Source: Pseudomonas aeruginosa PAO1
GTDB lineage: Bacteria; Pseudomonadota; Gammaproteobacteria; Pseudomonadales; Pseudomonadaceae
Length of the DNA stretch: 64,000 bases
NCBI RefSeq assembly: GCF_000006765.1
Contig: NC_002516.2
Reading direction: 5' to 3' (one strand)
Shown: piece by piece, positions 13,873 through 24,813 of the stretch
Position numbering within the stretch: position 1 is the stretch's first letter
Layout: each line of letters starts with the position of its first letter
The notes under the pieces: model-generated
What the model was told of the DNA's origin: nothing
Databases searched by the model: none
What the model saw: the letters and a program-made list of their open reading frames with translations, nothing else
Position numbers and translations under genes: made by a program

Positions 13873-15309
13873 TCAGCCAGGCGGCGCCACGCCCTGGCAT
13901 AGCTGGTACTGTCCCACCGGCGGCCGGCAGCGCAAGCGCTGGCGCACCTCGTCGGGCAAGGCGCCGAACGAACGCGAGCGGATCGCCAGCAGGGCGTCGC
14001 GACGCAACCAGCCGGCCAGCTCGCTGTCCTCCGCCCGTTGCGCCCGCCCGCCGCTGTAGAACACTGCCGAGTACGGCCGCTTCGGCCAGAACACCAGCGG
14101 CCGCTCGCGCCAGCCGGCGTCGCTGGCCAGCAGCGCGGCGGTGGACTTCTGCTCGGCGCGCGAGCCCAGCAGCAGGGAGCCGAGGAACAGCGCGAACAGC
14201 AATGGGGTCAGTGCCAGGCAAGCCAACCCACCACGCCGCAGCCAGGCGCTGCGCGCCAGCGGCGCGCGCAGCAGGTCGGCGGCGAGCAACGCCAGGGCCG
14301 GCAGGCCGGGCAGCACGTAGGTCCAGAGGACGTTGCCGGCGAAGGTGAAGAACAGGCACGGCGCCAGTCCCCAGAACAGCCAGTAGCGCCTGCGCGAGGC
14401 GACGCCATCGACCACCTCCCCGCGCTGGCGCCAGCCCAGCCAGAGCAGCAGCGGCAGCCAGAGGCTCCAGGGAAACGCGGCGGCCAGCAGGAACAGCCAG
14501 ACGCTGCCGTAGGGATAGGCGTGGGCATTGCCGTAGCGGTCGCCGTCCCAGCCGGCGGTGACGAAGCGCTGCCAATGCTCGCCGAGCAGGAAGTACTCGA
14601 GGAAGCCCGGCGTCTTCAACTCCGCCAGCAGGTACCAGGGCGCGGCCACCAGGAGCATCAGCAGGCTTCCGCGGATCCATGGCAGGCCCCGCCAGAGCGC
14701 GCGCCAGCGCCACTCCAGCAAGGCCCACAGGCCGATCGGCAGTCCGGCGAGGATCAGCGTCAGCGGCCCCTTCGCCAGCAGCCCGAGGCCGAGGCCGAGG
14801 AACATCAGCCAGCCCTCGCGGCGCCGGATTCCCTCCGCGCCATGCAGGCCCAGCCAGAAGCCGCGCATGGCCAGGACCAGCGCCAGGGCCAGGGCCATGT
14901 CGGTCATTACCGCCCCGGAGGCGACGAAGAACAGCGCCGAACTGCCCAGCAGGACGCAGGCGATCCGCGCCTGCCGACGATCTTCGCGAGCCTGCCAGTC
15001 CCATACCAGCCACAGCACCAGCACGCCCAGCAACCAGTGCGGCAGGCGGCTGGCGAACTCGTTGGCGCCGAGCAGAAGCTGGCCGCCGGCGCTGAGCCAG
15101 AAGGCCAGCGGCGGCTTGCCCCAGAACGGCACGCCGACGTCGTACCAGGGCGTGATCCAGTCGCCCAGTTCGGCCATCTTCCGCGCCACCTCGCCATAGC
15201 GGGCCTCGGTGGTGTCCATCAGCGGATAGCTGCCCAGGCTCAGCAGGCGGATGGCGAAGGCCAGGGCGAGCAGGAACCAGGCCAGCGGCCAGCCGCGCAG
15301 CGCCCTCAC
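13873..15309 (-). CDS. ArnT/PMT-like (GT83/GT-C) polyprenol-phosphate-sugar glycosyltransferase
   Basis: 478 aa multi-TM; DTTEARYGEVARKM, WITP, FWGKPPLAFW, LAKGP and KLWTY-like (VLWTYVLP) ArnT motifs. Confidence 0.85.
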   Translation of the reverse strand: MRALRGWPLAWFLLALAFAIRLLSLGSYPLMDTTEARYGEVARKMAELGDWITPWYDVGVPFWGKPPLAFWLSAGGQLLLGANEFASRLPHWLLGVLVLWLVWDWQAREDRRQARIACVLLGSSALFFVASGAVMTDMALALALVLAMRGFWLGLHGAEGIRRREGWLMFLGLGLGLLAKGPLTLILAGLPIGLWALLEWRWRALWRGLPWIRGSLLMLLVAAPWYLLAELKTPGFLEYFLLGEHWQRFVTAGWDGDRYGNAHAYPYGSVWLFLLAAAFPWSLWLPLLLWLGWRQRGEVVDGVASRRRYWLFWGLAPCLFFTFAGNVLWTYVLPGLPALALLAADLLRAPLARSAWLRRGGLACLALTPLLFALFLGSLLLGSRAEQKSTAALLASDAGWRERPLVFWPKRPYSAVFYSGGRAQRAEDSELAGWLRRDALLAIRSRSFGALPDEVRQRLRCRPPVGQYQLCQGVAPPG

Positions 15310-16280
15310 GGATTGGCCCCGCCGACCTGAGCCGGCAGGTAGCGGTCGATCAGGTAGAGCGGGCGGCGCCGCGCTTCCATGGTCATCCGCCCGAGGTATT
15401 CGCTACACACGCCGATGGCCAGCAGTTGCAGGCCGCCGATCAGGAACAGCGCGGCGATCACCGGCCAGTGTTCGTGGATCTCCTGCTGGCCGAAGATCCC
15501 GGCGAGCAGGGTCGCCAGGGCCGCCAACAGGCTGAGCAGGCCGAGGTAGCCGGCGACCTTCAGCGGCGCGGTGGAAAACCCGGTGATGCCTTCCAGGGCG
15601 AAGTTCCACAGCCGCCAGTAGCGCCACTTGCTGTGGCCGGCGACGCGGGCGGCGCGGCTATAGGCGATATCGACCTGGCGGAAACCGACCCAGGCGAACA
15701 GTCCCTTCATGAAGCGATTGCCTTCCGGCAGCTCGCAAAGGGCATCGACCACCCGCCGGTCGAGCAGGCGGAAGTCGCCGACGTCGCGCGGGATCGGCAC
15801 CTCGCTGAGGCGGTTGATCAGCCGGTAGAAGGCGCTCGCCGAGGCGCGCTTCAGCCAGCTTTCGCCGGCCCGGCTGCGGCGGCGCATGTTGACCATTTCG
15901 GCGCCGCCGATCCAGGCGTCGAGCATCTGCGGGATCAGTTCCGGGGGATCCTGCAGGTCGGCATCGATGACGATCACCGCGGCGCCGCGCGACAGCTTGA
16001 GCCCGGCGCTCATCGCCTGTTCCTTGCCGAAGTTGCGGGTGAAGCGGGCCACGCCCACCCGGCGGTCGGCGGCCTGTAGCTGAGCGAGGATCGCCGCGCT
16101 GCGGTCGGTGCTGCCGTCGTCGACATAGAGCACCTCGCAATCGTCGCCAAGGTCGCCGAGCACGGCGCCCAGGCGCTGGTGGAAGGCCGGCAGCACCGCC
16201 TCCTCGTTGAACACCGGCACTACCACGCTGAGCAGGCAGGGGGCCTCGAGCTTCGACGCCAGGGAAGGTTCGATCATCAT
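15306..16280 (-). CDS. GtrB/ArnC-like GT2 bactoprenol-phosphate glycosyltransferase
   Basis: ATG at 16280 (ATGA overlap), 324 aa; SVVVPVFNEE, VDDGSTD, RNFGKE, IDADLQDPPE, GDFRLLDR; two C-terminal TM helices. Confidence 0.9.
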   Translation of the reverse strand: MMIEPSLASKLEAPCLLSVVVPVFNEEAVLPAFHQRLGAVLGDLGDDCEVLYVDDGSTDRSAAILAQLQAADRRVGVARFTRNFGKEQAMSAGLKLSRGAAVIVIDADLQDPPELIPQMLDAWIGGAEMVNMRRRSRAGESWLKRASASAFYRLINRLSEVPIPRDVGDFRLLDRRVVDALCELPEGNRFMKGLFAWVGFRQVDIAYSRAARVAGHSKWRYWRLWNFALEGITGFSTAPLKVAGYLGLLSLLAALATLLAGIFGQQEIHEHWPVIAALFLIGGLQLLAIGVCSEYLGRMTMEARRRPLYLIDRYLPAQVGGANP

Positions 16281-16639
16281 GAGAAGGTCCAGAGTCGATG
16301 AAGGTGATAGGTCGCCAACAGCAGTGCGCCGGTCGCGGCGAGCTGGGCCAGGCGGTAGTCGAGTCCGGCGAGGTCGCCGAGCAGCAACACCAGGACGGCG
16401 TTGCCGAGTACGCAAAGCAGGCTGACGGCGAAGAAGCGCGGCAGCGAACGGAACACCGGCCCACGGTGGCGGAAAGTCTTCCGGCGATGCCCCAGGTAGG
16501 CAGCCAGAGCCCCGCAGCCTGCTCCCGTCGCGGCGGCCACGGCGGCGCCGACGGCGAAGCCCTCGACCAGGAGGGTCAGCACCAGGTAATGAACGGCGGT
16601 GGCACCGGCGCCGACCGAGACGAAACGCCCCAGGAGCAT
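16277..16639 (-). CDS. GtrA-family putative Und-P-sugar flippase
   Basis: 120 aa, four TM; RFVSVGAGAT and KTFR..FRSLPRFF pattern; translationally coupled to the GT2 gene. Confidence 0.85.
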   Translation of the reverse strand: MLLGRFVSVGAGATAVHYLVLTLLVEGFAVGAAVAAATGAGCGALAAYLGHRRKTFRHRGPVFRSLPRFFAVSLLCVLGNAVLVLLLGDLAGLDYRLAQLAATGALLLATYHLHRLWTFS

Positions 16640-16875: not shown

Positions 16876-18237
16876 ATGAGCCTGTTGCGCGATGCCTGGC
16901 GCCACGCCCCGACCCACCACAGGGTCTGGGCGCTGGCCGGGCCGATGATTCTGTCGAACGTTTCCGTTCCCCTGGTGCACCTGGTGGACAGCACGGTGGT
17001 CGGCCACCTGCCGCACGCCTACCAGCTCGGCGCGGTAGCCGTGGGCGGCAGCCTGTACACCCTGATGGTCGGCGTGCTCGGCTTCCTGCGCATGGGCACC
17101 ACCGGCTTCGCCGCCCAGGCCGCCGGCCGCGACGATGGCGGCGCGCTGCGCCTGATCCTCGCCCAGGGCCTGGGCATGGCGCTGCTCCTGGCCCTGCTGC
17201 TCGGCGCGCTGGCCCTGCCCCTGAGCGGCTGGGCCCTGCAACTGATGCAACCTTCGGCGGAACTGACCGGCGAGGCCCGCGCCTTCTTCCATACCCGCCT
17301 GCTCGGCCTGCCGGCGGCCCTGGCCAGCTACGCACTGGTCGGCTGGTTCCTCGGCACGCAGAACGCACGGGCGCCATTGGCGATCCTGTTGACCACCAAC
17401 CTGAGCAACATCGCCCTGGTGCTCTGGTTCGTCCACGGCCTCGACTGGGGCGTGCAAGGCGCGGCCCGCGCCTCGGTGCTGGCGGAATGGAGCGGCGCCC
17501 TGCTCGGCCTGGCCCTGACCCGCCGCGACCTGGCCCGGCGCCCCGGGCGGGCGCAGTGGCAACGCCTGCGCCACTGGCTGTCGTGGCTGCCGCTGCTGAT
17601 GGTCAACCGGGATATCTTCATCCGCAGCCTGGCCCTGCAACTGGTGTTCTTCCTGCTCACCGTACAGGGCACTCGCCTCGGCGACACCACGGTAGCCGCC
17701 AACGCCCTGCTGCTCAACGGCCTGCTCCTGACGTCCTACGCCCTCGACGGTCTCGCCCACGCGGTGGAGGCGCTCTGCGGCCACGCCATCGGCGCCCGCG
17801 ACCGAGCCGCCCTGCGCCGCGCGCTGGTGGTAGCCGGTGGTTGGTCGCTGCTGGCAAGCCTGGCGTTCGCCGCGCTGTTCGCCTTGTTCGGCCACCTGTT
17901 CATCGACCTGCAGAGCGACATCGCCGGCGTCCGCGAAGTCGCCTACGCCTATCTGCCGTACCTGGCCTGCCTGCCGCTGCTGGGGATGTGGAGCTATCTG
18001 CTCGACGGCCTGTTCATCGGCGCCACCCGCGCCCGCGAGATGCGTAACGCGATGCTCGTCGCGGTGGCCGCCAGCCTGCCCCTCGGCTGGCTGTTGCAGG
18101 GGCTGGGCAACCACGGGCTATGGCTGGCGTTCCTCGCCTTCATGCTGCTGCGCGGGCTGGTCCTGGCCGCCTACGGCTGGCGCCTGACCCGCCGCGATGG
18201 CTGGTTCCCCGCTCAGGGCGCCGACAGCGGACGATAG
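16876..18237 (+). CDS. dinF: MATE-family efflux protein, DinF-like
   Basis: 453 aa; LAGPMILSNVSVPL...VDSTVVGHL, FLRMGTTG and LDGLAHAVE motifs. Confidence 0.88.
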   Translation: MSLLRDAWRHAPTHHRVWALAGPMILSNVSVPLVHLVDSTVVGHLPHAYQLGAVAVGGSLYTLMVGVLGFLRMGTTGFAAQAAGRDDGGALRLILAQGLGMALLLALLLGALALPLSGWALQLMQPSAELTGEARAFFHTRLLGLPAALASYALVGWFLGTQNARAPLAILLTTNLSNIALVLWFVHGLDWGVQGAARASVLAEWSGALLGLALTRRDLARRPGRAQWQRLRHWLSWLPLLMVNRDIFIRSLALQLVFFLLTVQGTRLGDTTVAANALLLNGLLLTSYALDGLAHAVEALCGHAIGARDRAALRRALVVAGGWSLLASLAFAALFALFGHLFIDLQSDIAGVREVAYAYLPYLACLPLLGMWSYLLDGLFIGATRAREMRNAMLVAVAASLPLGWLLQGLGNHGLWLAFLAFMLLRGLVLAAYGWRLTRRDGWFPAQGADSGR

Positions 18238-18581
18238 GCGAGCATCAGCGGGACGTCGGCAGCGTGCGCGACCTGTACCAGTTCGCTGGCCAGGCGCCCA
18301 CCGGGAAACACCAGCACCAGGTCCGGCGCGGCATCGCCGAAGACGGCCTCGCCATACTCGCGCAGGGCGTTGTCGCTGCCACTGCGCTCCGGATAATCGT
18401 AGGCGCGCGAATCCGCGCCACGCTCGCGGCACCAGCGCTCGGCCTCGTCCGGCAGGCCGCTGCCGGCATGCAGCAGGTGGCCGAGCAGCGCCACCGGTTG
18501 CAGGCCGTGGCACTGGTCGAGCGCCAGGCGCAGGCGTTCGGCGTCCTTGAAATGGCGTCCGGCGCAGATCAGGAGGCGCAT
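18213..18581 (-). CDS. Small SLOG-superfamily (YspA/DUF2493-like) protein, divergent
   Basis: 122 aa; MRLLICAGRHF.D...PDLVLVFPGG..V..A..ADVP matches the recalled DUF2493 pattern; the start overlaps the upstream transporter stop by 13 nt. Confidence 0.7.
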   Translation of the reverse strand: MRLLICAGRHFKDAERLRLALDQCHGLQPVALLGHLLHAGSGLPDEAERWCRERGADSRAYDYPERSGSDNALREYGEAVFGDAAPDLVLVFPGGRLASELVQVAHAADVPLMLAYRPLSAP

Positions 18582-20236
18582 GCCGATCCCTCCCCTTGCC
18601 CTGGCTCATCCGGCCGCTTCGCCATCGGATCGATGCCGCTGCGTTCGAGCAGCGGATAGGCCAGGGCGGTGACATGATGGTGGATGCGTCGGTAGTCGCG
18701 GAGAATGCGCTGGAACACGTCACCGGACTCCACCCAGGCACCACGATCGTCGCGCAGGCGACGGAAGCGCTCGCGACTGGCATCGGCCTCCAGTCGCTGC
18801 AGCAACTTCTTGCGCGCCACCAGACGCAGCGCGGCGTCCAGGTCTTCGCGAAGGAACGCGCTGATCGCCAGGTGCAGGCTCTCCTCGATCACCGCCTGCA
18901 ACGGCAGCATGCGGCCCAGCTCGAACTCGCTGCCGGCGCGGCTGCGCCCGGCCCAGCGCATCGCCAGGGGCAGCAGGCTGTTGGCGACGAGATCGCCGAT
19001 GTGCTCGATGTTGATGGCGAACAGGAGGATTTCCTGGGCACGATCGGCGTCGCTGTCGCCGAGGCCGTCCTGGCCGAGGTCTGCCAGGTAGGCGCGGATC
19101 GCCGCACTCAACTGGTCGAGGGCCTGGTCCTGGCGACGGATTTCCGCCGCCACCTTCGCCTCCGGTCGCTGCAACAGGCCGCTGGTGGCGCGCAGCATCA
19201 GACTGGCCATGTCGGCCAGCCGCAGGACTTCGCGAGTAGCGTTGGCCAGGCCGATGTTGGCCACCTCCAGCCCGGCTTCGTCGAGGTAGCGCGGCATGCC
19301 CGGCTCGTCGGACTGTGCCTCTTCCGGCAACAGGCGCGCGAGCAGCGCCGCAAGGGTTCCGGTGAAGCCGATCGCCAGCAGTGCCAGGGCCAGGTTGAAA
19401 TCACTGTGGAACCAGACCGCCGCCGCACCGCCGAGTGCGTTGGCCGGTTGCGCCAGCGCCGTCAGCCAGGGCAGCACCAGCAGGCAACCGAGCAGGCGCA
19501 CCAGCAGGTTGCCCAACGGCAGGCGCCGCGCCACCCGGCTACCGGCCACCCCTAGCGCCGGCAAGGCGCCGCCGAGGTTGGCACCGAGCACTAGGGCCAG
19601 GGCGATGGGCAGCGAGACCAGTCCGGCCTGGGCCAGGGACGCCACCAGCAGTACCACCGCGACACTGGAATGGCAGGCCCAGGTCAGCAGCGCGGCGAGC
19701 AGCAGGGCGATCAGCGGATCGCCTTCGAGGCCGTGGATCACCGCGACAAAGGCTGGCGAGGCCTCGATCTGCTGCAGGGAATGGCCGAGCAACGCCAGCG
19801 CCAGGAGCATCAGGCCGAGTCCGATCAGGCACTGGCCAAGGCTCTCCAGGCGTGGACCGTCGCCCAGGCGGAACAGCAGCAGGCCGGACAGCAGGGCCAG
19901 CGGCGCCAGCAACGAGGTGTCGAAGCTGAGCAGTTGCACCACCAGGGTGGTGCCGACGTTGGCGCCGAGCATCACTGCCAGCGCCGGCGCCAGGCCCAGG
20001 GTGCCACTGGCAGTGAAGGACGCTGCCATCAGGCTGGTGGCGGTGCTGCTCTGCAGCAGGCCGGTGATGCCGAGCCCGGCGAGCAGGGCCAGCCAGCGGT
20101 TGCCCAGGTGGCGGCCGAGCCAGTTGCGCAGCACAGTGCCGAAACCGCGCAGCACGCCGCTGGAGACCATGTGCGTGCCCCACAACAGGAGGGCCACGGC
20201 ACCGGCCAGGTTGATCAGGAGGATGGTTCCCAGCAT
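18569..20236 (-). CDS. Na+/Pi cotransporter family protein with C-terminal PhoU-like domain (YjbB-like)
   Basis: 555 aa; LQSSTAT and CHSSVAV repeat motifs, two LGANxG motifs, helical C-terminal domain (INIEHIGDL). Confidence 0.9.
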   Translation of the reverse strand: MLGTILLINLAGAVALLLWGTHMVSSGVLRGFGTVLRNWLGRHLGNRWLALLAGLGITGLLQSSTATSLMAASFTASGTLGLAPALAVMLGANVGTTLVVQLLSFDTSLLAPLALLSGLLLFRLGDGPRLESLGQCLIGLGLMLLALALLGHSLQQIEASPAFVAVIHGLEGDPLIALLLAALLTWACHSSVAVVLLVASLAQAGLVSLPIALALVLGANLGGALPALGVAGSRVARRLPLGNLLVRLLGCLLVLPWLTALAQPANALGGAAAVWFHSDFNLALALLAIGFTGTLAALLARLLPEEAQSDEPGMPRYLDEAGLEVANIGLANATREVLRLADMASLMLRATSGLLQRPEAKVAAEIRRQDQALDQLSAAIRAYLADLGQDGLGDSDADRAQEILLFAINIEHIGDLVANSLLPLAMRWAGRSRAGSEFELGRMLPLQAVIEESLHLAISAFLREDLDAALRLVARKKLLQRLEADASRERFRRLRDDRGAWVESGDVFQRILRDYRRIHHHVTALAYPLLERSGIDPMAKRPDEPGQGEGSACAS

Positions 20237-20278
20237 GGCGGAACTCCCGGTTCGGAATGGATCGTGAAGGGAACGGGC

Positions 20279-20488
20279 TCATTGACCCATGGCCAGCCTG
20301 AGCGATGCACGGTTGAGCGCGCTCGAGCAGTCCAGCAGGTATTTCACTTCGACCTGGCTCAGGCGGCCGCTGGCGTATGCGCGCACGCTGACCACCATCA
20401 GCAGGTGCGCGGCCTTCGCCAGCAGCCGTGCTGCCAGGCCACAGAGCGCGCGGCGAGACGCGCCCAGGCATTTGCGTACGACGTTCAT
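20279..20488 (-). CDS. Small hypothetical protein, 69 aa (MNVVRKCLGASRR...)
   Basis: GAGGA SD 7 nt upstream of ATG 20488; fills the gap between operon genes. Confidence 0.65.
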   Translation of the reverse strand: MNVVRKCLGASRRALCGLAARLLAKAAHLLMVVSVRAYASGRLSQVEVKYLLDCSSALNRASLRLAMGQ

Positions 20489-20538
20489 GGCTGCTTCCTC
20501 GGTGGAGGAGCGCGCCGCAGCGCGGCACGCCCTTGGGC

Positions 20539-21315
20539 TCAGAAACGCAAGGTCGCTCCCGAGACCAGCCATCGCTCGCGCTCGCCGCGCAGGTGGCCGC
20601 CGACCAGCAGATCGAGGTCCAGCCGTTCGCCCAGGTGCAGCCGCGGTCCGGCCTGCCAGCCGCTGTCGCCGGCCGACTCGCCGAAGCGTTCGGCGATCAG
20701 GGTCAACGGCTGGCCAACGCGGTATTCCATGCCCATGCCCCAGTTCCAGCGATGCCGGCGCTCGCCCTCGGCGTAGGCATGCCCCAGGCCGACCCCGGCG
20801 TTCAGGCGCAGGGCCTCGAACGGCTGGTAGCTCAGCGGCAGGTTGAAGCCGGCGCCTTCGAAGGCGTGCCGGCGGTCCAGGTAGAGATCCGCCGAGAGCG
20901 CGAAGGCCAACGCCAGGCCGAGGTCGTCGCGGGCCAGCAGCGGTGTCTTCAGCTCGGGGCTGAGGCGGCTGTGCCGATCGCCTGCGTCGCCCTCGCGCAC
21001 CAGCGCCGCGCCGAGCTGCACCGATGGTAGGGCGGAGAAGGTGCAGGCTGGCGACAGCACCGACTGGTAGCGGTTGCCGTGGTGGCGTTCGCGCTGGTGC
21101 CAGGCGTCCAGGTTGCATTCGCCGACGGGGTCGATCTCGCCGTCGTCGACCCGGTAGGCGCCGCCCGCGGCGCGAGCCTCGGACAGCAGCGCCAGCAGCA
21201 GGACGCAGGCGAGCGCGGCGGCGACGAAGCCCAGGCGCCAGGACAGGGCGCGTCGCAGCGCGGCCGGCAGCGGTTGGAAAAGGGGCGCCCGCGGGCGCCG
21301 GTCGTGCAGGGTCAT
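20539..21315 (-). CDS. Putative outer-membrane beta-barrel protein (~258 aa)
   Basis: Signal-like segment ending AXA (ARA|AGGAYRVDD); alternating amphipathic strands; C-terminal beta-signal WLVSGATLRF. Alternative start at 21330. Confidence 0.75.
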   Translation of the reverse strand: MTLHDRRPRAPLFQPLPAALRRALSWRLGFVAAALACVLLLALLSEARAAGGAYRVDDGEIDPVGECNLDAWHQRERHHGNRYQSVLSPACTFSALPSVQLGAALVREGDAGDRHSRLSPELKTPLLARDDLGLALAFALSADLYLDRRHAFEGAGFNLPLSYQPFEALRLNAGVGLGHAYAEGERRHRWNWGMGMEYRVGQPLTLIAERFGESAGDSGWQAGPRLHLGERLDLDLLVGGHLRGERERWLVSGATLRF

Positions 21316-21412
21316 GATGCGTCTCTCCATGCGTGGGTCCGGTGTGCGTTGCGCGGCGCGGCGAGGCTTGCCGACGCGCCGGGAAAGGCCGGGACGAAGC
21401 CCGGCCGATCGC

Positions 21413-24124
21413 TCAGAACCACTGGCCGAAGCGGCGGATGTAGAGGGTCTTCATGGTCTGCGCGGTGACGCAGTAGCAGAGCAGCGTGCCCACCAGCCAG
21501 GGGAAGTACTCCCACGGCAGCGGCTGCAGGCCGACCACCGCTCCCAGCGGCGAGAACGGCACGTAGATGCCCAGCGCCATCACCAGCCCGGTCATCAGCA
21601 TCACCGGCAGCGCCGCGGTGCTCTGGATGAAGGGAATCTTCTGGGTACGCAGCATGTGCACCACCAGGGTCTGCGAGAGCAGGCCCTCGATGAACCAGCC
21701 GGACTGGAACAGCGACTGCATTTCCGGGCTGTTGGCGGCGAACACGAACCACATCAGCGCGTAGGTGGTGATGTCGAAGATCGACGAGGTCGGGCCGATC
21801 CAGACCATGAAGCGGCCGATGTTCTTCGAGTCCCACTTGCGCGGCTTGGCGAGGAATTCCTTGTCCATCTTGTCCCACGGCAGCGACAGCTGGGAGATGT
21901 CGTACATCAGGTTCTGCAGCAGCAGGTGGATCGCCAGCATCGGCAGGAAGGGGATGAAGGCGCTGGCCACCAGTACCGAGAACACGTTGCCGAAGTTGGA
22001 GCTGGCAGTCATGTTCAGGTACTTCATGATGTTGCCGAAGGTCTCGCGGCCCTTGATAACGCCCTCCTCCAGGACCATCAGGCTTTTTTCCAGGAGGATG
22101 ATGTCGGCCGATTCCTTGGCGATGTCGGTGCCGCTGTCCACCGAGATGCCGACATCGGCATCTCGCAGCGCGGGGGCGTCGTTGATGCCGTCGCCGAGGA
22201 AGCCAACGGTGTGTCCGTTGCCCTGCAGGGCCTTGAGCACCCGCGACTTCTGCAGCGGCGTCAGCTTGGCGAACACCGTGCGCTCCTCGGCCAGGCGTTG
22301 CAGGGTGGCATCGTCCATCAGGTCGATGTCGCGACCGAGCAGCGGCTCGCCGACGTCCAGGCCGACCTCGCGGCAGATCTTCGCGCTGACCACCGGGTTG
22401 TCGCCGGTGAGCACCTTCACTGCCACGCCGTTCTCGCGCAACGCGGCGATGGCCGGGCCGGCGGTTTCCTTCGGTGGATCGAGGAAGGTCAGCAGGCCGG
22501 CGATCACCAGGTCGCGCTCGTCGCTGGCGCCGTACTGGGCCTGGGACTCCGTGCGCGAGAGGCTGCGGGTGCCGAGCAGGAGCACGCGGAAGCCGTCGCG
22601 GTTGTATTGCTCGGCCAGCGCCAGCAGGGCCCGGCGGCGTTCCTCGTCGAGCGGCAGGTCGACACCGTCCTGGTGCACGCGGGTGGCGATCTCGAGCATT
22701 TCCTCGACCGCGCCCTTGCACACCAGCAGCTGTTCGCCGTCCTTGCCCTCGAGGATCACCGAGAGACGCCGACGGACGAAATCGAAGGGCAGTTCGTCGA
22801 CCTTGCGCCAGGCATCCGACGGCGTGATGCGCGGGTTCTGTTCGACGAAGGCGACCACCGCGCGGTCCATCAGGTTCTTCATCCCGGACTGGTGGAAGCT
22901 GTTCAGCCAGGCCATTTGCAGGACCCGGTCGCAGCGCCGGCCGGCAACGTCGACGTGATGCTCGAGGATGATCCGGTCCTGGGTCAGGGTGCCGGTCTTG
23001 TCGGTGCAGAGCACGTCCATGGCGCCGAAGTTCTGGATCGCGTTGAGGCGCTTGACCACCACCTTGCGCCGCGACATCGCCACCGCGCCCTTGGCCAGGT
23101 TGGCGCTGACGATCATCGGCAGCATTTCCGGGGTCAGGCCGACCGCCACGGCGAGAGCGAACATGAACGCCTCGGTCCAGTCGCCCTTGGTGAAACCGTT
23201 GATCAGCAGCACGATCGGCACCATCACCAGCATGAAGCGGATCAGCAGCCAACTGACGCTGTTCACCCCACGGTCGAAGGCGGTCTGCGCCCGCGAACCG
23301 ACGATGGAACGGGCCAGCGAACCGAAATAGGTGCGCGCACCGGTGGCAACCACCACCGCGGTGGCCGTGCCGCTGACCACGTTGGTGCCCATGAAGCAGA
23401 TGTTCGGCAGTTCGAGCAGGTCCTGCTGGTCGGCGGCGATCCGCTTGGCGGACTTCTCGCGGACCGCGCCGAGGGTGTCGTATTTCTCCACCGGCAGCGC
23501 CTCGCCGGTGAGTACGGCCTGGCTGATGAACAGGTCGCGCGATTCGATCAGGCGGATGTCGGCGGGGATCATGTCGCCGGCGGACAGGCGCACGATGTCG
23601 CCGACCACCAGTTCGCCCATGGGGATTTCCCGCAGCTCGCCGCGCATCCCGCGCTCGTCGCGGCGCAGCACGGTGGCGGTGTTCCGCACCATGGCCTTGA
23701 GCGCCTCGGCGGCCTTGCCCGAACGGTATTCCTGCCAGAAGCGCATCAGGCCGCTGACCAGGACCATGCAGAGGACGATGATGACGCCGGTGAGATCGGT
23801 TTCCTCACCGTCCTGCAGGGGCAGCCAGAAGTCGGTGAAGAAGCTGATCGCAGAGAGCGTCATCAGCACGTAGATGAAGGGGTTGTTGAACGCCTGCAGC
23901 AGTTGCACCAGGACGTGTGGCGGACGGTCGTGGGCCACTTCGTTGGGGCCGTCGGCGTGCAGCCGGGCGGCGGCCTCGGCCTGGTCGAGGCCGTCCTGGC
24001 GACCGCGGACATTGGTGAGGGTGGTTTCCAGGCTGTTCTGCGCTTCGCGGGCGGCGCGCATGGACAGTCGGTCGTTGCGGCGCTCGGTATCGAGCTGGGT
24101 ATTGCGTTGGGTCGCTACGCTCAT
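21413..24124 (-). CDS. mgtA: Mg2+-importing P-type ATPase
   Basis: 903 aa; TGEALP, PEMLP, DKTGTLT, KGAVEE, TGDN and GDGINDAPAL motifs; AGGAG SD. Confidence 0.97.
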   Translation of the reverse strand: MSVATQRNTQLDTERRNDRLSMRAAREAQNSLETTLTNVRGRQDGLDQAEAAARLHADGPNEVAHDRPPHVLVQLLQAFNNPFIYVLMTLSAISFFTDFWLPLQDGEETDLTGVIIVLCMVLVSGLMRFWQEYRSGKAAEALKAMVRNTATVLRRDERGMRGELREIPMGELVVGDIVRLSAGDMIPADIRLIESRDLFISQAVLTGEALPVEKYDTLGAVREKSAKRIAADQQDLLELPNICFMGTNVVSGTATAVVVATGARTYFGSLARSIVGSRAQTAFDRGVNSVSWLLIRFMLVMVPIVLLINGFTKGDWTEAFMFALAVAVGLTPEMLPMIVSANLAKGAVAMSRRKVVVKRLNAIQNFGAMDVLCTDKTGTLTQDRIILEHHVDVAGRRCDRVLQMAWLNSFHQSGMKNLMDRAVVAFVEQNPRITPSDAWRKVDELPFDFVRRRLSVILEGKDGEQLLVCKGAVEEMLEIATRVHQDGVDLPLDEERRRALLALAEQYNRDGFRVLLLGTRSLSRTESQAQYGASDERDLVIAGLLTFLDPPKETAGPAIAALRENGVAVKVLTGDNPVVSAKICREVGLDVGEPLLGRDIDLMDDATLQRLAEERTVFAKLTPLQKSRVLKALQGNGHTVGFLGDGINDAPALRDADVGISVDSGTDIAKESADIILLEKSLMVLEEGVIKGRETFGNIMKYLNMTASSNFGNVFSVLVASAFIPFLPMLAIHLLLQNLMYDISQLSLPWDKMDKEFLAKPRKWDSKNIGRFMVWIGPTSSIFDITTYALMWFVFAANSPEMQSLFQSGWFIEGLLSQTLVVHMLRTQKIPFIQSTAALPVMLMTGLVMALGIYVPFSPLGAVVGLQPLPWEYFPWLVGTLLCYCVTAQTMKTLYIRRFGQWF

Positions 24125-24176
24125 GACTCGGTCTCCTGTCGCGAGCTGCGCGACGGCGACACGAGTCGGTTGCCGG

Positions 24177-24311
24177 TCAGGTGACAGGCAAAGGCGTGCC
24201 GGGTCGCGATGTTCGCGATCGGTGGGAAGAATGTTCGGCTTGTCCGGGTGAGGCCCACTGCGCGCGGCCGCTCAGGCGGCACGCAGCAGGCCGACTTGGT
24301 GGTTCGTCCAT
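24177..24311 (-). CDS. Candidate mgtA leader peptide, 44 aa (MDEPPSRPAACRLSGRAQWASPGQAEHSSHRSRTSRPGTPLPVT)
   Basis: AAGGAG SD (24318-24323) 6 nt before ATG 24311; TGA at 24177-24179, 52 nt before the mgtA ATG. Translated by hand. Confidence 0.55.
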   Translation of the reverse strand: MDEPPSRPAACRLSGRAQWASPGQAEHSSHRSRTSRPGTPLPVT

Positions 24312-24350
24312 GGCAGGCTCCTTGTGCGAAGGGTTAGGCAGGAGAAAGGG

Positions 24351-24569
24351 TCAGCCGCGCATCGGGCGGCGACCGCTCTCAGGGTTCTCTTCGACCTGCG
24401 TCTCCAGGCGGCGATACTCCAGGCGACCGCCGGCCGGGTCGACACGCCAGGCGAGGCTCGCAGGATGGCCGTGGCCGGGAAGGATCGCGCCGGGGGACTG
24501 CGCGGCGCGCACGCGCATCTTCGCCACGAAGGCGGATACGCCGGGGGATACCGAATTCTCGAAGTTCAT
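24351..24569 (-). CDS. Small hypothetical protein, 72 aa, upstream of mgtA
   Basis: AGGTG SD upstream of ATG 24569; sequence MNFENSVSPG...WRVDPAGGRLEYRRL. Confidence 0.6.
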   Translation of the reverse strand: MNFENSVSPGVSAFVAKMRVRAAQSPGAILPGHGHPASLAWRVDPAGGRLEYRRLETQVEENPESGRRPMRG

Positions 24570-24615
24570 GACTCACCTGTACCCGGCGTGCCGGACACGG
24601 GTGAGAAGCAGTGGG

Positions 24616-24735
24616 TCAGCCCAGGATGCCGCTCAACCGACCGACCCGTTGCGGGTTCCGTCGTGCGTTGGTTTGGGTCATCGCACCAGCCGGCATCTGC
24701 TGGGCCGGGCGACGACTACTGGGAATACTGTCCAT
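24616..24735 (-). CDS. Candidate upstream ORF, 39 aa (MDSIPSSRRPAQQMP...)
   Basis: First ATG after the predicted TSS; weak GAAGAGAG SD. Confidence 0.3.
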   Translation of the reverse strand: MDSIPSSRRPAQQMPAGAMTQTNARRNPQRVGRLSGILG

Positions 24736-24784
24736 GGCTCTCTTCGTAGGGGGAAAGAAAGTGCCCGGCTCTGCGGGCGGGGGT

Positions 24785-24813
24785 TTTATAGACCTCTTGC
24801 CAGACGAGGTCAA
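24785..24813 (-). promoter_or_regulatory. sigma70 promoter of the mgtA unit with an internal inverted repeat
   Basis: TTGACC-N17-TATAAA on the minus strand; GACCTC-N9-GAGGTC at 24791-24811. Confidence 0.75.

What the first reader, a model, noticed from the sequence alone, without database searches (positions are those of the whole stretch)
18213..24813. Extended mgtA operon: possible coupled Mg2+-uptake / phosphate-handling system
Seen: one minus-strand run with short gaps and one strong promoter: leader ORFs, mgtA, OM beta-barrel, 69-aa protein, Na+/Pi-PhoU transporter, SLOG protein. Established: in enterobacteria low cytoplasmic Mg2+ is tied to ATP/Pi pools because ATP and rRNA chelate Mg2+, and E. 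coli YjbB has been linked to Pi export. Inference: the operon imports Mg2+ (barrel plus ATPase) while lowering or sensing Pi or nucleotides (transporter plus SLOG). I know of no mechanistic description of the accessory genes.
Basis: partly seen in the sequence, partly recalled or inferred. Interest (0 to 1): 0.78.

Follow-up and report, generated by a model that had tools for sequence, protein, structure and literature searches.

The report
Extended magnesium-starvation operon of Pseudomonas
The Pseudomonas aeruginosa magnesium pump gene mgtA really does sit in one low-magnesium-induced gene string with an outer-membrane channel, a small protein, a phosphate-type transporter and a nucleotide-binding-fold protein. 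These partners and a long unusual leader recur next to magnesium transporter genes in distantly related bacteria, but only the pump and the channel have a tested function.

Summary
The window is P. aeruginosa PA4819-PA4829. On the minus strand lie a near-consensus promoter, a ~660-nt leader with three small ORFs (one is PA4826), mgtA (PA4825), a 12-stranded barrel (PA4824), a 69-aa protein, a YjbB-like Na/Pi-PhoU transporter and a SLOG (YAcAr/DUF2493) protein. The gaps are 97, 50, 42 and -13 nt.

Published RNA-seq shows PA4822-PA4826 induced 11-34-fold when Candida sequesters Mg2+. Deleting PA4824 lowers cellular Mg2+ (PMC11218974).

My synteny work gives three results:
- The SLOG protein is the most persistent partner. 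It follows mgtA in Pseudomonas, Enterobacterales and Rhizobiales, there together with mgtC, and it precedes mgtE in a Rhodobacterales genome.
- The Na/Pi-PhoU gene belongs to a distinct subfamily: 58% identical to the Klebsiella copy but only 35% to E. coli YjbB. It lies directly behind mgtA in 45 of 52 informative metagenome loci, and directly behind the same leader in 7 more.
- The leader RNA and its uORFs are conserved from Pseudomonas to Rhizobiales and match no Rfam family.

Coupling of Mg2+ uptake to phosphate or nucleotide handling is plausible but untested. Transposon hits in PA4822/23 gave no fitness defect. I rate it a new variant of a known kind.

The parts
24784..24812 (-). Promoter TTGACC - 17 nt - TATAAA
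   Evidence: Read directly. The same TTGAC[AT]-N17-TA[AG]ATT promoter was found upstream of 76 of 78 related mgtA loci. The consensus scan picked it up in L007.
24763..24778 (-). 5' hairpin GCCCG-CAGAGC-CGGGC followed by a U-rich run, directly after the -10 hexamer
   Evidence: The terminator-like scan found it. A hairpin at this place occurs in the 78 distinct related leaders as 68 different sequences. Mean energy is -9.8 kcal/mol against -6.9 for shuffles.
24567..24779 (-). Conserved leader RNA element (part 1: transcript start to the uORF2 start codon)
   Evidence: The nhmmer profile of alignment A3 gives a single hit in the window, E 2.7e-22. It also hits Pseudomonas, Enterobacterales, Rhizobiales and Rubellimicrobium loci. 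Of 28 proposed pairs, 88% of cells are paired against 31-46% when slid, and 15 pairs show two-sided changes. There is no Rfam match.
24616..24735 (-). uORF1, 39 aa (MDSIPSSRRPA...)
   Evidence: The start context AAGA..CCAATGGAC and the first codons (MD[TS]xxS) are conserved, with synonymous changes, across gamma- and alpha-proteobacteria. Translation has not been shown.
24351..24569 (-). uORF2 = PA4826, 72 aa
   Evidence: The primers of PMC11218974 map it. The family of 70-100 aa ORFs (M[NT]F..S..PGVRAF..MRVK...WRVxPxxGxLxxRW...DSQDPxSR) is present in nearly all related leaders. The codon-position pattern indicates translation. It is induced 10.7-fold in low Mg2+.
24177..24311 (-). uORF3, 44 aa (MDEPPSRPAACRL...), an mgtL-like proline-rich leader ORF
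   Evidence: A uORF lies at a fixed distance of -183 to -189 nt from the mgtA ATG in P. aeruginosa, many other Pseudomonas, the putida group and Rhizobiales (MDDYPSRPA).
24252..24292 (-). Long hairpin inside uORF3
   Evidence: The leader fold has z = -3.5. An equivalent 17-bp hairpin with a different sequence sits at the same place in L007 and in other loci.
21413..24124 (-). mgtA (PA4825), Mg2+-importing P-type ATPase
   Evidence: Family hits. Published phenotypes.
21387..21406 (-). Hairpin GGCCGGG-CTTCGT-CCCGGCC followed by UUUCCC, just after the mgtA stop; a possible partial terminator
   Evidence: Sequence and fold. Read density falls from 7277 per kb (mgtA) to about 2300-2700 per kb in the three downstream genes while the fold change stays the same. 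This reading is an inference.
20539..21315 (-). PA4824, a 12-stranded outer-membrane beta-barrel with a signal peptide (cleavage ARA|AGG)
   Evidence: Model and fold search. Family. Mg2+ phenotype in PMC11218974.
20279..20488 (-). 69-aa basic two-helix protein ('p69'; probably PA4823)
   Evidence: Conserved 66-78 aa ORF directly upstream of the Na/Pi gene in Pseudomonas and Enterobacterales, and upstream of the SLOG gene in Rhizobiales. The motif is VRLYxRGxLSxxExRxLLxFSxAIxRxSxRL. Codon pattern.
18569..20236 (-). YjbB-like Na/Pi-cotransporter-PhoU protein, 555 aa (probably PA4822)
   Evidence: Family hits. It is 35% identical to E. coli YjbB over the full length and 58% to the mgtA-linked Klebsiella aerogenes copy. 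Metagenome synteny.
18213..18581 (-). SLOG (YAcAr/DUF2493) protein, 122 aa; its start overlaps the Na/Pi stop by 13 nt
   Evidence: Family hits. The model has pLDDT 90 and a Rossmann-like fold whose best PDB matches are CARF domains. Conserved next to mgtA, mgtC and mgtE.

Best explanation
This is one Mg2+-limitation-induced transcription unit of about 6.6 kb.

Shown:
- A near-consensus promoter is followed by a ~660-nt leader. The leader holds a conserved structured RNA and three small ORFs. Then come mgtA, PA4824, a 69-aa protein, a YjbB-like Na/Pi-PhoU transporter and a SLOG protein.
- All the annotated members rise together when Mg2+ is withdrawn.
- MgtA and the PA4824 barrel each raise cellular Mg2+ (published).

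Inferred, leader:
- The leader is the sensor. As with enterobacterial mgtL, translation of the acidic, proline-containing uORFs runs into long hairpins and decides whether transcription reaches mgtA.
- Regulation acts both before uORF2 and between uORF2 and mgtA.
- A weak hairpin after mgtA lets about one third of transcripts continue into the accessory genes.

Inferred, proteins:
- PA4824 is a KdgM/NanC-like 12-stranded channel that lets Mg2+ cross the outer membrane to the ATPase.
- The YjbB-like transporter moves Pi out of the cytoplasm, or at least stops net Pi gain. Less Pi is then fixed into ATP and other Mg2+-chelating phosphates, the same logic as MgtC-mediated limitation of Pi uptake in Salmonella.
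- The 69-aa basic helical protein modulates that transporter or MgtA, as MgtS does with PitA and MgtA in E. coli.
- The SLOG protein is the partner that follows Mg2+ transporters of three different families across two proteobacterial classes. It is proposed to be a small nucleotide-binding regulator, possibly a nucleotide-processing enzyme, that ties Mg2+ transport to the nucleotide pool.
For: Anatomy and family assignments.

Co-induction: log2FC is 4.6-5.1 for PA4822-25 and 3.4 for PA4826. The induction is abolished by Mg2+, and PA4821 on the opposite strand is not induced. Read density is uniform for PA4824, PA4823 and PA4822 (2665, 2291 and 2582 per kb) against 7277 for mgtA. A second paper makes the operon statement, with joint down-regulation in a fprB deletion mutant.

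PA4824: deletion lowers Mg2+ and fitness, the effect adds to that of deleting mgtA, and Mg2+ rescues it. The 12-strand model resembles KdgM, NanC and OmpG.

Conservation:
- Among 80 barrel-anchored Pseudomonas species loci, about 70 carry mgtA nearby. The SLOG gene lies between mgtA (or the Na/Pi gene) and the barrel in nearly all of these. The 13-nt Na/Pi-SLOG overlap is kept in all but one of the Pseudomonas loci that have both genes.
- Outside that set: Kosakonia, Klebsiella aerogenes, Rouxiella and a Rahnella-type plasmid carry uORF2-mgtA-small ORF-Na/Pi-SLOG. P. entomophila carries mgtA-SLOG. Mesorhizobium and L092 carry uORFs-mgtA-small ORF-SLOG-mgtC. Rubellimicrobium carries uORF2-SLOG-mgtE.
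- Of the Na/Pi-anchored metagenome loci, 45 of 52 lie behind mgtA and 7 of 52 lie directly behind the same leader.
- The leader profile hits every locus that has upstream sequence.

Background: limiting Pi assimilation protects cytoplasmic Mg2+, and YjbB is treated as a Pi exporter (PMC7980370). MgtS binds MgtA and PitA.
Against: - No experiment addresses the Na/Pi protein, the 69-aa protein or the SLOG protein.
- PA4822 and PA4823 were not among the genes with a fitness defect in the Mg2+-limited Tn-seq, whereas PA4824-26 were.
- The Na/Pi gene and the small protein are absent from the fluorescens-type loci (mgtA-SLOG-barrel), so they are not needed for MgtA to work.
- The direction of transport cannot be read from sequence. 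The export role of E. coli YjbB rests on over-expression, and this protein is only 35% identical to it.
- The P. aeruginosa SLOG protein has diverged at two motifs kept in all other members: IHGG became LHAG, and PGGxDTxEL became PGGRLASEL.
- Assigning PA4822 to the Na/Pi gene and PA4823 to the 69-aa ORF is inferred from read counts, not read from an annotation. The SLOG ORF seems to have no PAO1 number, so its induction is not documented.
- No transcript mapping shows a single mRNA.
Confidence: 0.55

Rival explanations
1. The Na/Pi-PhoU protein is an importer, not an exporter. It would take up Pi with Na+, or a metal-phosphate or other anion. Its purpose would be to compensate the cytoplasmic Pi shortage that accompanies Mg2+ starvation, or to bring in Mg2+ as a phosphate complex.
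For: The protein belongs to the Na/Pi symporter families (NF037997 at 122 bits, TIGR01013). PMC7980370 itself allowed that YjbB might import Pi. It is always placed under the Mg2+-type leader, which fits either direction.
Against: Excess Pi uptake is harmful in low Mg2+ (PMC7980370). The only functional data for this architecture (two Na_Pi_cotrans repeats plus two PhoU repeats) point to export. PhoU domains are otherwise associated with restraining Pi uptake; that last point rests on established knowledge, not on a test here.
Confidence: 0.2
2. The SLOG protein is an enzyme of the LOG type, a nucleotide phosphoribohydrolase or nucleosidase. It would shrink the nucleotide pool and so release chelated Mg2+. 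It would not be a ligand-sensing regulator of the transporters.
For: PF10686 belongs to the SLOG superfamily, which includes the LOG enzymes. The PGG...E motif and several invariant polar residues (R9, H38, R52, D83, E100) are kept. The gene occurs with three unrelated Mg2+ transporter families, which fits an activity that does not need to contact any one of them.
Against: The protein is a minimal 115-122 aa single domain. The best structural matches are ligand-sensing CARF domains, not LOG enzymes. It is translationally coupled to membrane-protein genes. The motifs have decayed in P. aeruginosa.
Confidence: 0.2
3. The small protein and the SLOG protein are stability or assembly factors for MgtA, like MgtS, MgtR and MgtU. 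They would have no link to phosphate or nucleotides. The Na/Pi gene would be a lineage-specific addition with a separate role.
For: Small proteins that control MgtA or MgtB stability are the rule in enterobacteria (and established knowledge). The SLOG gene starts 1-9 nt after mgtA in the putida group. A p69-like ORF lies between mgtA and the SLOG gene in Rhizobiales, where there is no Na/Pi gene.
Against: The SLOG gene also accompanies mgtE where no mgtA is present, and an OprB porin in Phreatobacter. p69 has no clear transmembrane segment (sequence). The Na/Pi subfamily is tied to the leader in 51 of 52 informative loci.
Confidence: 0.15
4. The downstream genes are merely neighbours. They would be transcribed on their own and be functionally unrelated to Mg2+.
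For: No transcript mapping is available. A hairpin follows mgtA. Gene order differs between P. aeruginosa and other Pseudomonas.
Against: The genes show equal, Mg2+-reversible induction. They are linked in three orders of bacteria despite rearrangement. The overlapping stop and start codons are conserved. The Na/Pi gene sits directly under the same leader where mgtA is absent.
Confidence: 0.05

Closest known systems
Enterobacterial mgtA leader (Mg2+-sensing 5' leader with the proline-rich uORF mgtL; Rfam RF01056 Mg_sensor)
   Same: Both are long 5' leaders in front of mgtA that contain a short acidic, proline-containing uORF running into stem-loops. In both, expression rises in low Mg2+.
   Different: There is no match to RF01056 or to any other Rfam family. 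This leader is 660-810 nt long and has three uORFs, one of them 70-100 aa. A conserved hairpin with a U-run sits at the very 5' end. The element also precedes Na/Pi, SLOG-mgtE and SLOG-porin genes.
Salmonella mgtCBRU operon and MgtC-mediated limitation of Pi assimilation (PMC7980370)
   Same: Both are low-Mg2+ operons that join a P-type Mg2+ importer to accessory proteins that could lower the ATP/Pi burden on free Mg2+. In Rhizobiales the present module even contains mgtC.
   Different: The accessory set in Pseudomonas is a YjbB-like transporter, a SLOG protein, a 69-aa protein and an outer-membrane barrel. mgtC is not in the Pseudomonas operon. None of these accessory proteins resembles MgtC, MgtR or MgtU.
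E. coli YjbB (putative Pi exporter)
   Same: The domain architecture is the same (2 x Na_Pi_cotrans plus 2 x PhoU) and the two proteins align end to end.
   Different: Identity is only 35%. The mgtA-linked proteins form their own group, 58-66% identical between Pseudomonas and Enterobacterales, and always lie behind the Mg2+-type leader. E. coli yjbB lies between metH and pepE with no mgtA nearby.
MgtS-MgtA-PitA circuit of E. coli
   Same: In both, a low-Mg2+-induced small protein is linked to a Mg2+ ATPase and a phosphate transporter.
   Different: p69 is 66-78 aa against 31 aa for MgtS, is basic, has no obvious membrane span, and shows no sequence similarity to MgtS. Its target is unknown.
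KdgM/NanC/OmpG small monomeric outer-membrane channels
   Same: The predicted fold is a 12-stranded barrel. Target-normalised TM-scores are 0.71-0.83 to NanC and KdgM.
   Different: No sequence match to PF06178 or to any local Pfam model. The protein belongs to its own family (PF27733; 802 representatives at E<=1e-3). The published phenotype concerns Mg2+, not acidic sugars.
SLOG/LOG/CARF Rossmann-like nucleotide-ligand domains
   Same: PF10686 membership. The fold is a five-stranded Rossmann-like domain nearest to CARF domains.
   Different: Here it is a stand-alone 115-155 aa protein with no fused effector domain. Its context is Mg2+ transport rather than conflict or defence systems.

Membership tests
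Mg2+-importing P-type ATPase (type IIIB, MgtA/MgtB) | Full-length match above the curated cut-off of the equivalog model; phosphorylation motif DKTGT | tested here: met
   TIGR01524 scores 1425.8 bits against a cut-off of 610.75, and NF011702 scores 1749.5 against 975. The translation contains CTDKTGTLT.
Mg2+-importing P-type ATPase (type IIIB, MgtA/MgtB) | Mg2+ uptake activity and induction by low Mg2+ | not testable with these tools
   Published for PA4825: the deletion mutant has lower intracellular Mg2+, and the gene is induced 32-fold.
YjbB-type Na/Pi-cotransporter-PhoU proteins | Two Na_Pi_cotrans repeats followed by two PhoU repeats in one chain | tested here: met
   PF02690 at 149 bits with 2 stretches, and PF01895 at 51 bits with 2 stretches. 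NF037997 scores 122 against a cut-off of 50. TIGR00704 scores 209.7 against 210.1, just under the cut-off. The protein aligns end to end with E. coli YjbB at 35% identity.
YjbB-type Na/Pi-cotransporter-PhoU proteins | Orthology to E. coli YjbB (same subfamily, same context) | tested here: not met
   The protein is 35% identical to YjbB but 58-66% identical to the mgtA-linked group. The genomic context also differs. It is best treated as a paralogous subfamily.
YjbB-type Na/Pi-cotransporter-PhoU proteins | Pi export | not testable with these tools
   There are no data for this protein. For YjbB the only evidence is from over-expression (cited).
SLOG superfamily, YAcAr / DUF2493 (PF10686) | Score above the Pfam gathering threshold | tested here: met
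   The window protein scores 30.9 bits against 28.2. All 16 aligned relatives also match, the best at E 6.6e-20.
SLOG superfamily, YAcAr / DUF2493 (PF10686) | Rossmann-like fold with glycine-rich ligand loops (xCxGR after strand 1, HGG after strand 2, PGG..E after strand 4) | tested here: inconclusive
   The fold is met: pLDDT 90, five strands and four helices, with CARF domains as the best matches. In the P. aeruginosa protein the motifs are partly decayed: LHAG replaces IHGG, and PGGRLASE replaces PGGxDTxE.
KdgM/NanC porin family (PF06178) | Sequence match to the family model | tested here: not met
   No Pfam-A hit. The resemblance is in fold only.
Enterobacterial Mg2+ sensor leader (RF01056) / M-box (RF00380) | Match to the covariance model | tested here: not met
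   No Rfam match at E<=1 in window 17-27 kb, nor in the leaders of L007, L081 and L088.
Single operon (one transcript from the mgtA promoter) | Same strand, short or overlapping gaps, no strong internal terminator | tested here: met
   Gaps are 97, 50, 42 and -13 nt. The only internal signal is a weak hairpin with UUUCCC after mgtA.
Single operon (one transcript from the mgtA promoter) | Physical continuity of the mRNA | not testable with these tools
   The evidence is indirect only: equal fold change and uniform read density in published RNA-seq.

The most novel reading that the evidence does not exclude
The window shows one instance of an undescribed, widely distributed Mg2+-homeostasis regulon of alpha- and gamma-proteobacteria. 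The regulon would be defined by a cis-acting leader: a conserved promoter, a 5' hairpin, a ~215-nt structured RNA, a 70-100-aa uORF and an mgtL-like uORF running into a long hairpin. This leader is placed in front of MgtA, MgtE, a YjbB-like phosphate transporter, outer-membrane channels and MgtC. The stand-alone SLOG protein would be the constant trans-acting partner, coupling Mg2+ transport to a nucleotide signal. The YjbB-like protein would be the dedicated 'phosphate valve' that Salmonella achieves through MgtC.
Probability: 0.35. Interest if true: 0.85.

Novelty: new variant of a known kind. Interest (0 to 1): 0.66.

Why it matters
How bacteria keep free Mg2+ adequate when ATP, rRNA and phosphate compete for it is an active question. 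In Salmonella the answer involves MgtC and a Pi transporter that has still not been identified.

In this operon a phosphate-type transporter, a nucleotide-fold protein and a small protein are wired by conserved gene order and a conserved leader to Mg2+ importers in several proteobacterial orders. That gives named, deletable candidates for the Mg2+-phosphate-nucleotide link, in a well-studied organism in which the first accessory gene (PA4824) already has a Mg2+ phenotype.

Low Mg2+ also drives polymyxin tolerance and fungal-bacterial competition in P. aeruginosa (PMC11218974). The operon is therefore relevant to physiology during infection.

The leader would add a new family to the short list of Mg2+-responsive RNA and uORF control elements.

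Tried and rejected
1. Rfam scans of the window (17-27 kb) and of three related leaders, run to test for a known Mg2+ riboswitch or leader, found nothing.
2. A PhoP box (GTTCAG-N5-GTTCAG, recalled from memory) was sought by eye upstream of the -35 hexamer. Only one reversed half-site (CTGAAC) is there, and nothing is conserved upstream of -35 apart from A/T-rich sequence. The question was dropped. PhoP dependence could not be settled from the papers held. The McPhee 2006 paper is not held.
3. PDB sequence searches with the SLOG and barrel profiles gave only chance-level hits.
4. BLAST of the 69-aa protein against the 78-aa Klebsiella ORF gave no alignment. The relationship was recognised only from position, length and a shared motif pattern, so homology across orders is probable, not proven.
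5. RNAalifold on short sub-blocks of the leader alignment returned no structure, because the variable hairpins are misaligned. The 5' hairpin was instead checked sequence by sequence.
6. The first word-based search with the P. aeruginosa SLOG protein alone found almost only P. aeruginosa copies. A profile of Pseudomonas orthologues was needed.
7. A literature search for YAcAr/DUF2493 returned only unrelated papers.
8. The idea that the leader promoter is constitutive and that all control is by attenuation was rejected. uORF2 RNA itself changes more than 10-fold.
9. The reading of the first leader ORF as the 65-aa TTG ORF was rejected, because that ORF begins upstream of the -10 hexamer.

Full report
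**What is there.** The window has about 68-70% G+C. Published PAO1 deletion primers for PA4824 and PA4826 match it exactly at the gene borders, so it is P. aeruginosa, region PA4819-PA4829.

On the minus strand between 24812 and 18213 lie, in order:
- A promoter, TTGACC-17 nt-TATAAA, at 24812-24784.
- A hairpin followed by a U-rich run at 24778-24763.
- Three small ORFs: 24616-24735 (39 aa), 24351-24569 (72 aa, = PA4826) and 24177-24311 (44 aa).
- mgtA, 21413-24124.
- A 258-aa secreted protein, 20539-21315 (PA4824).
- A 69-aa ORF, 20279-20488.
- A 555-aa Na_Pi_cotrans/PhoU protein, 18569-20236.
- A 122-aa SLOG protein, 18213-18581.

The gaps are 97, 50 and 42 nt, and the last two genes overlap by 13 nt. 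A convergent DinF-type MATE gene overlaps the 3' end of the SLOG gene by 25 nt.

**The proteins.**
- MgtA is an unambiguous type IIIB Mg2+ ATPase.
- PA4824 has no hit in the local Pfam or NCBIfam copies, but its relatives carry PF27733. A model built on 16 orthologues (pLDDT 70 overall, 70-88 in the barrel) shows a long signal helix and 12 strands. It is closest to NanC, KdgM and the Vibrio GalP porin (target-normalised TM 0.71-0.83) and to OmpG and FapF. A profile search of 1.84 billion representatives finds 802 relatives, mostly 220-250 aa, so the family is wider than Pseudomonas.
- The transporter aligns end to end with E. coli YjbB at 35% identity, but it is 58% identical to a Klebsiella aerogenes protein that also follows mgtA. 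It represents a separate subfamily.
- The SLOG protein passes the PF10686 threshold narrowly (30.9 bits against 28.2). All 16 aligned orthologues match, the best at 6.6e-20. The model (pLDDT 90) is a five-stranded Rossmann-like domain whose nearest solved structures are CARF domains of Cam1 and Csm6 (E 5e-5, TM about 0.6). The P. aeruginosa and P. paraeruginosa proteins have lost parts of two motifs that all other members keep.

**Is it one Mg2+-responsive unit?** The supplementary RNA-seq of Hsieh et al. (PLoS Biol 2024, PMC11218974) compared growth with Candida albicans, which sequesters Mg2+, against monoculture.

| Gene | log2 fold change |
|---|---|
| PA4822 | 4.60 |
| PA4823 | 4.82 |
| PA4824 | 5.09 |
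| PA4825 (mgtA) | 4.98 |
| PA4826 | 3.42 |

- Each of these genes occurs only in that sheet, so none changes 4-fold when 10 mM Mg2+ is added. PA4821 is not listed.
- Mean counts per kb are about 13000 (PA4826), 7300 (mgtA), 2700 (PA4824), 2300 and 2600. The last two figures hold only if PA4823 is the 69-aa ORF and PA4822 is the transporter. The opposite assignment would require a 40-fold difference between two overlapping genes, so I adopt the first. This is an inference.
- The drop after mgtA coincides with a 7-bp G+C hairpin followed by UUUCCC.
- The smaller fold change of PA4826 means that control acts both before uORF2 and between uORF2 and mgtA.
- No transcript mapping was found.

**Function shown by others.** Deleting PA4824 lowers intracellular Mg2+ and fitness in Mg2+-depleted conditions. 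The effect adds to that of deleting mgtA and is rescued by Mg2+. Deleting PA4826 has no effect of its own. PA4822 and PA4823 were not among the Tn-seq fitness genes. A 2026 review of Mg2+ transporters does not mention PA4824, and the other accessory genes did not appear in any of its passages on P. aeruginosa.

**Conservation.** A scan of one genome per species with the barrel profile returned 80 loci, all Pseudomonas. They show three layouts:
- P. aeruginosa and P. paraeruginosa: uORF2-mgtA-barrel-p69-Na/Pi-SLOG.
- About 30 species (chlororaphis, gingeri, mandelii, brassicacearum and related): uORF2-mgtA-(p69)-Na/Pi-SLOG-barrel.
- About 40 species of the fluorescens subgroup: uORF2-mgtA-SLOG-barrel.
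- A few loci have only mgtA-barrel, or the barrel alone.

The 13-nt Na/Pi-SLOG overlap is kept in all but one of the Pseudomonas loci that have both genes. p69 is a genuine conserved ORF of 66-71 aa where the mgtA-Na/Pi gap is at least 330 nt, and it is absent where the gap is 140-223 nt.

A profile of the SLOG orthologues reached other taxa. Their contexts were then read:
- Kosakonia: the Na/Pi gene and the small ORF are decayed.
- Klebsiella aerogenes, Rouxiella, a Rahnella-type megaplasmid and an enterobacterial-like contig: uORF2-mgtA-small ORF-Na/Pi-SLOG.
- P. entomophila and a relative: mgtA-SLOG with a gap of only 1-9 nt.
- Mesorhizobium soli and a second genome with the same layout (L092, taxon not given): two uORFs-mgtA-102-aa p69-like ORF-SLOG-mgtC.
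- A Rubellimicrobium genome: uORF2-SLOG-mgtE.
- Phreatobacter: uORF2-like ORF-SLOG-OprB porin.

Nine of these ten contexts hold a Mg2+ transporter gene.

The metagenome scan anchored on the Na/Pi subfamily gave 52 loci with enough flanking sequence. In 45 the gene follows mgtA and in 38 the SLOG gene follows it. In 7 it stands directly behind the same leader with no mgtA or SLOG gene. Only one locus, the most divergent, lacks the leader.

The module was not found in complete E. coli genomes at megablast sensitivity.

**The leader.** Upstream of uORF2 the sequence is conserved at the nucleotide level from Pseudomonas to Enterobacterales and Rhizobiales.
- The promoter is TTGAC[AT]-N17-TA[AG]ATT, found in 76 of 78 loci.
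- A hairpin follows whose sequence differs between taxa (68 variants). After it comes a U-run that can also pair with the purine-rich tract in front of uORF1.
- The start of uORF1 (ATGGAC...AGT) is invariant.
- Several helices show compensatory changes. Of 28 proposed pairs, 88% of cells are paired against 31-46% when slid. Fifteen pairs show two-sided changes against 5-9 when slid. None of 500 shuffles reached the observed values. The structure was derived from the same alignment, so this is moderate evidence.
- uORF2 shows codon-position periodicity: 64.5k, 57.0k and 93.0k differences at codon positions 1, 2 and 3. Synonymous changes exceed non-synonymous ones, unlike in a shifted-frame control. 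It therefore appears to be translated.
- uORF3 lies at a fixed -183 to -189 nt from the mgtA ATG. It begins MDEPPSRPA in P. aeruginosa, MDEASRRFA in many Pseudomonas, MESASRKFA in the putida group and MDDYPSRPA in Rhizobiales. It always runs into a long hairpin.
- This resembles enterobacterial mgtL in logic; that comparison rests on my own knowledge. No Rfam family matches.

**How it most likely works.**

Shown:
- Co-induction by Mg2+ withdrawal.
- Mg2+ phenotypes of mgtA and PA4824.
- Conserved linkage of the genes.

Inferred:
- The leader senses Mg2+ status through uORF translation and alternative RNA structures.
- The barrel is the outer-membrane entry for Mg2+.
- The YjbB-like transporter relieves the phosphate load. 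This is the logic demonstrated for Salmonella, where limiting Pi assimilation preserves free Mg2+ and YjbB is regarded as an exporter.
- p69 modulates a transporter, by analogy with MgtS acting on MgtA and PitA.
- The SLOG protein binds a nucleotide-type ligand and acts on, or alongside, whichever Mg2+ transporter it accompanies.

The weakest steps are the direction of Pi transport and the role of the SLOG protein.

**Verdict.** Operon membership and the barrel are already in the literature. The cross-order conservation of the SLOG protein, the small protein and the YjbB-like subfamily with Mg2+ transporters did not turn up in the literature I could search. The same is true of the leader family. 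I rate the finding a new variant of a known kind (low-Mg2+ operons with accessory factors), with interest 0.66.

Noticed in passing
window 24567-24779 (-), and L001-L172 upstream of mgtA: A ~215-nt leader RNA element is conserved at the nucleotide level from Pseudomonas to Enterobacterales, Rhizobiales and a Rubellimicrobium genome. It shows compensatory base changes and matches no Rfam family. It also precedes Na/Pi-only, SLOG-mgtE and SLOG-OprB gene sets.
   Followed up: yes
window 24351-24569 (-) (PA4826): PA4826 belongs to a conserved family of 70-100-aa upstream ORFs with the motif WRVxPxxGxLxxRW...DSQDPxSR and a coding-type substitution pattern. The published deletion has no fitness effect, which suggests a cis-regulatory rather than a trans-acting role.
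   Followed up: partly
window 24177-24311 (-) and 24616-24735 (-): In P. aeruginosa uORF1 (MDSIPSSRRPA) and uORF3 (MDEPPSRPA) start with similar peptides and similar nucleotide strings (ATGGAC...CCAGTAG/CAAGTCG). This may be an internal duplication or a shared recognition feature.
   Followed up: no
window 24763-24778 (-): A terminator-like hairpin with a U-run lies only a few bases after the -10 hexamer, so at the very 5' end of the transcript, and it is conserved in all related leaders. The U-run can alternatively pair with the purine-rich Shine-Dalgarno-like tract of uORF1. Its role (early terminator, 5' stabiliser or translational switch) is unexplained.
   Followed up: partly
window 18213-18581 (-): The SLOG proteins of P. 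aeruginosa and P. paraeruginosa are only 32-39% identical to those of other Pseudomonas, and two otherwise invariant motifs have changed (IHGG to LHAG; PGGxDTxEL to PGGRLASEL). This coincides with the barrel gene having moved from the end of the operon to just behind mgtA in these two species.
   Followed up: partly
window 18213-18237: The SLOG gene and the convergent DinF-type MATE gene (16876-18237, +) overlap by 25 nt at their 3' ends, with no terminator between them. The SLOG ORF appears to have no PAO1 locus number, because only PA4822 and PA4823 are available for three ORFs.
   Followed up: partly
L081/L082 about 6850-7240 (Kosakonia arachidis): The small ORF and the Na/Pi gene are broken in this species. 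There are frameshifts and a short tandem TTGCTGC repeat at the 5' end of the transporter gene, yet mgtA and the SLOG gene stay intact.
   Followed up: no
window 15306-16639 (-) and L088 9874-13355: A GT2 glycosyltransferase plus a GtrA-like membrane protein (PA4819/PA4820) lie 1.6 kb beyond the operon. The Mesorhizobium mgtA-SLOG-mgtC locus is likewise flanked by GtrA, GT2, YdjC and an ArnT-like PMT gene. This could be a recurring neighbourhood of envelope-modification genes, or coincidence.
   Followed up: no
L083 8457-9944 and L087 8480-9469: In the P. putida group the SLOG gene is followed by a ComM/Mg-chelatase-like AAA+ gene instead of the barrel.
   Followed up: no
L085 (Klebsiella aerogenes) and plasmid hits H1-H10: In Enterobacterales the module sits next to IS, integrase and group II intron-type genes, or on 0.46-0.62-Mb Rahnella-type megaplasmids. 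This suggests horizontal spread of a second, Pseudomonas-type mgtA locus.
   Followed up: partly
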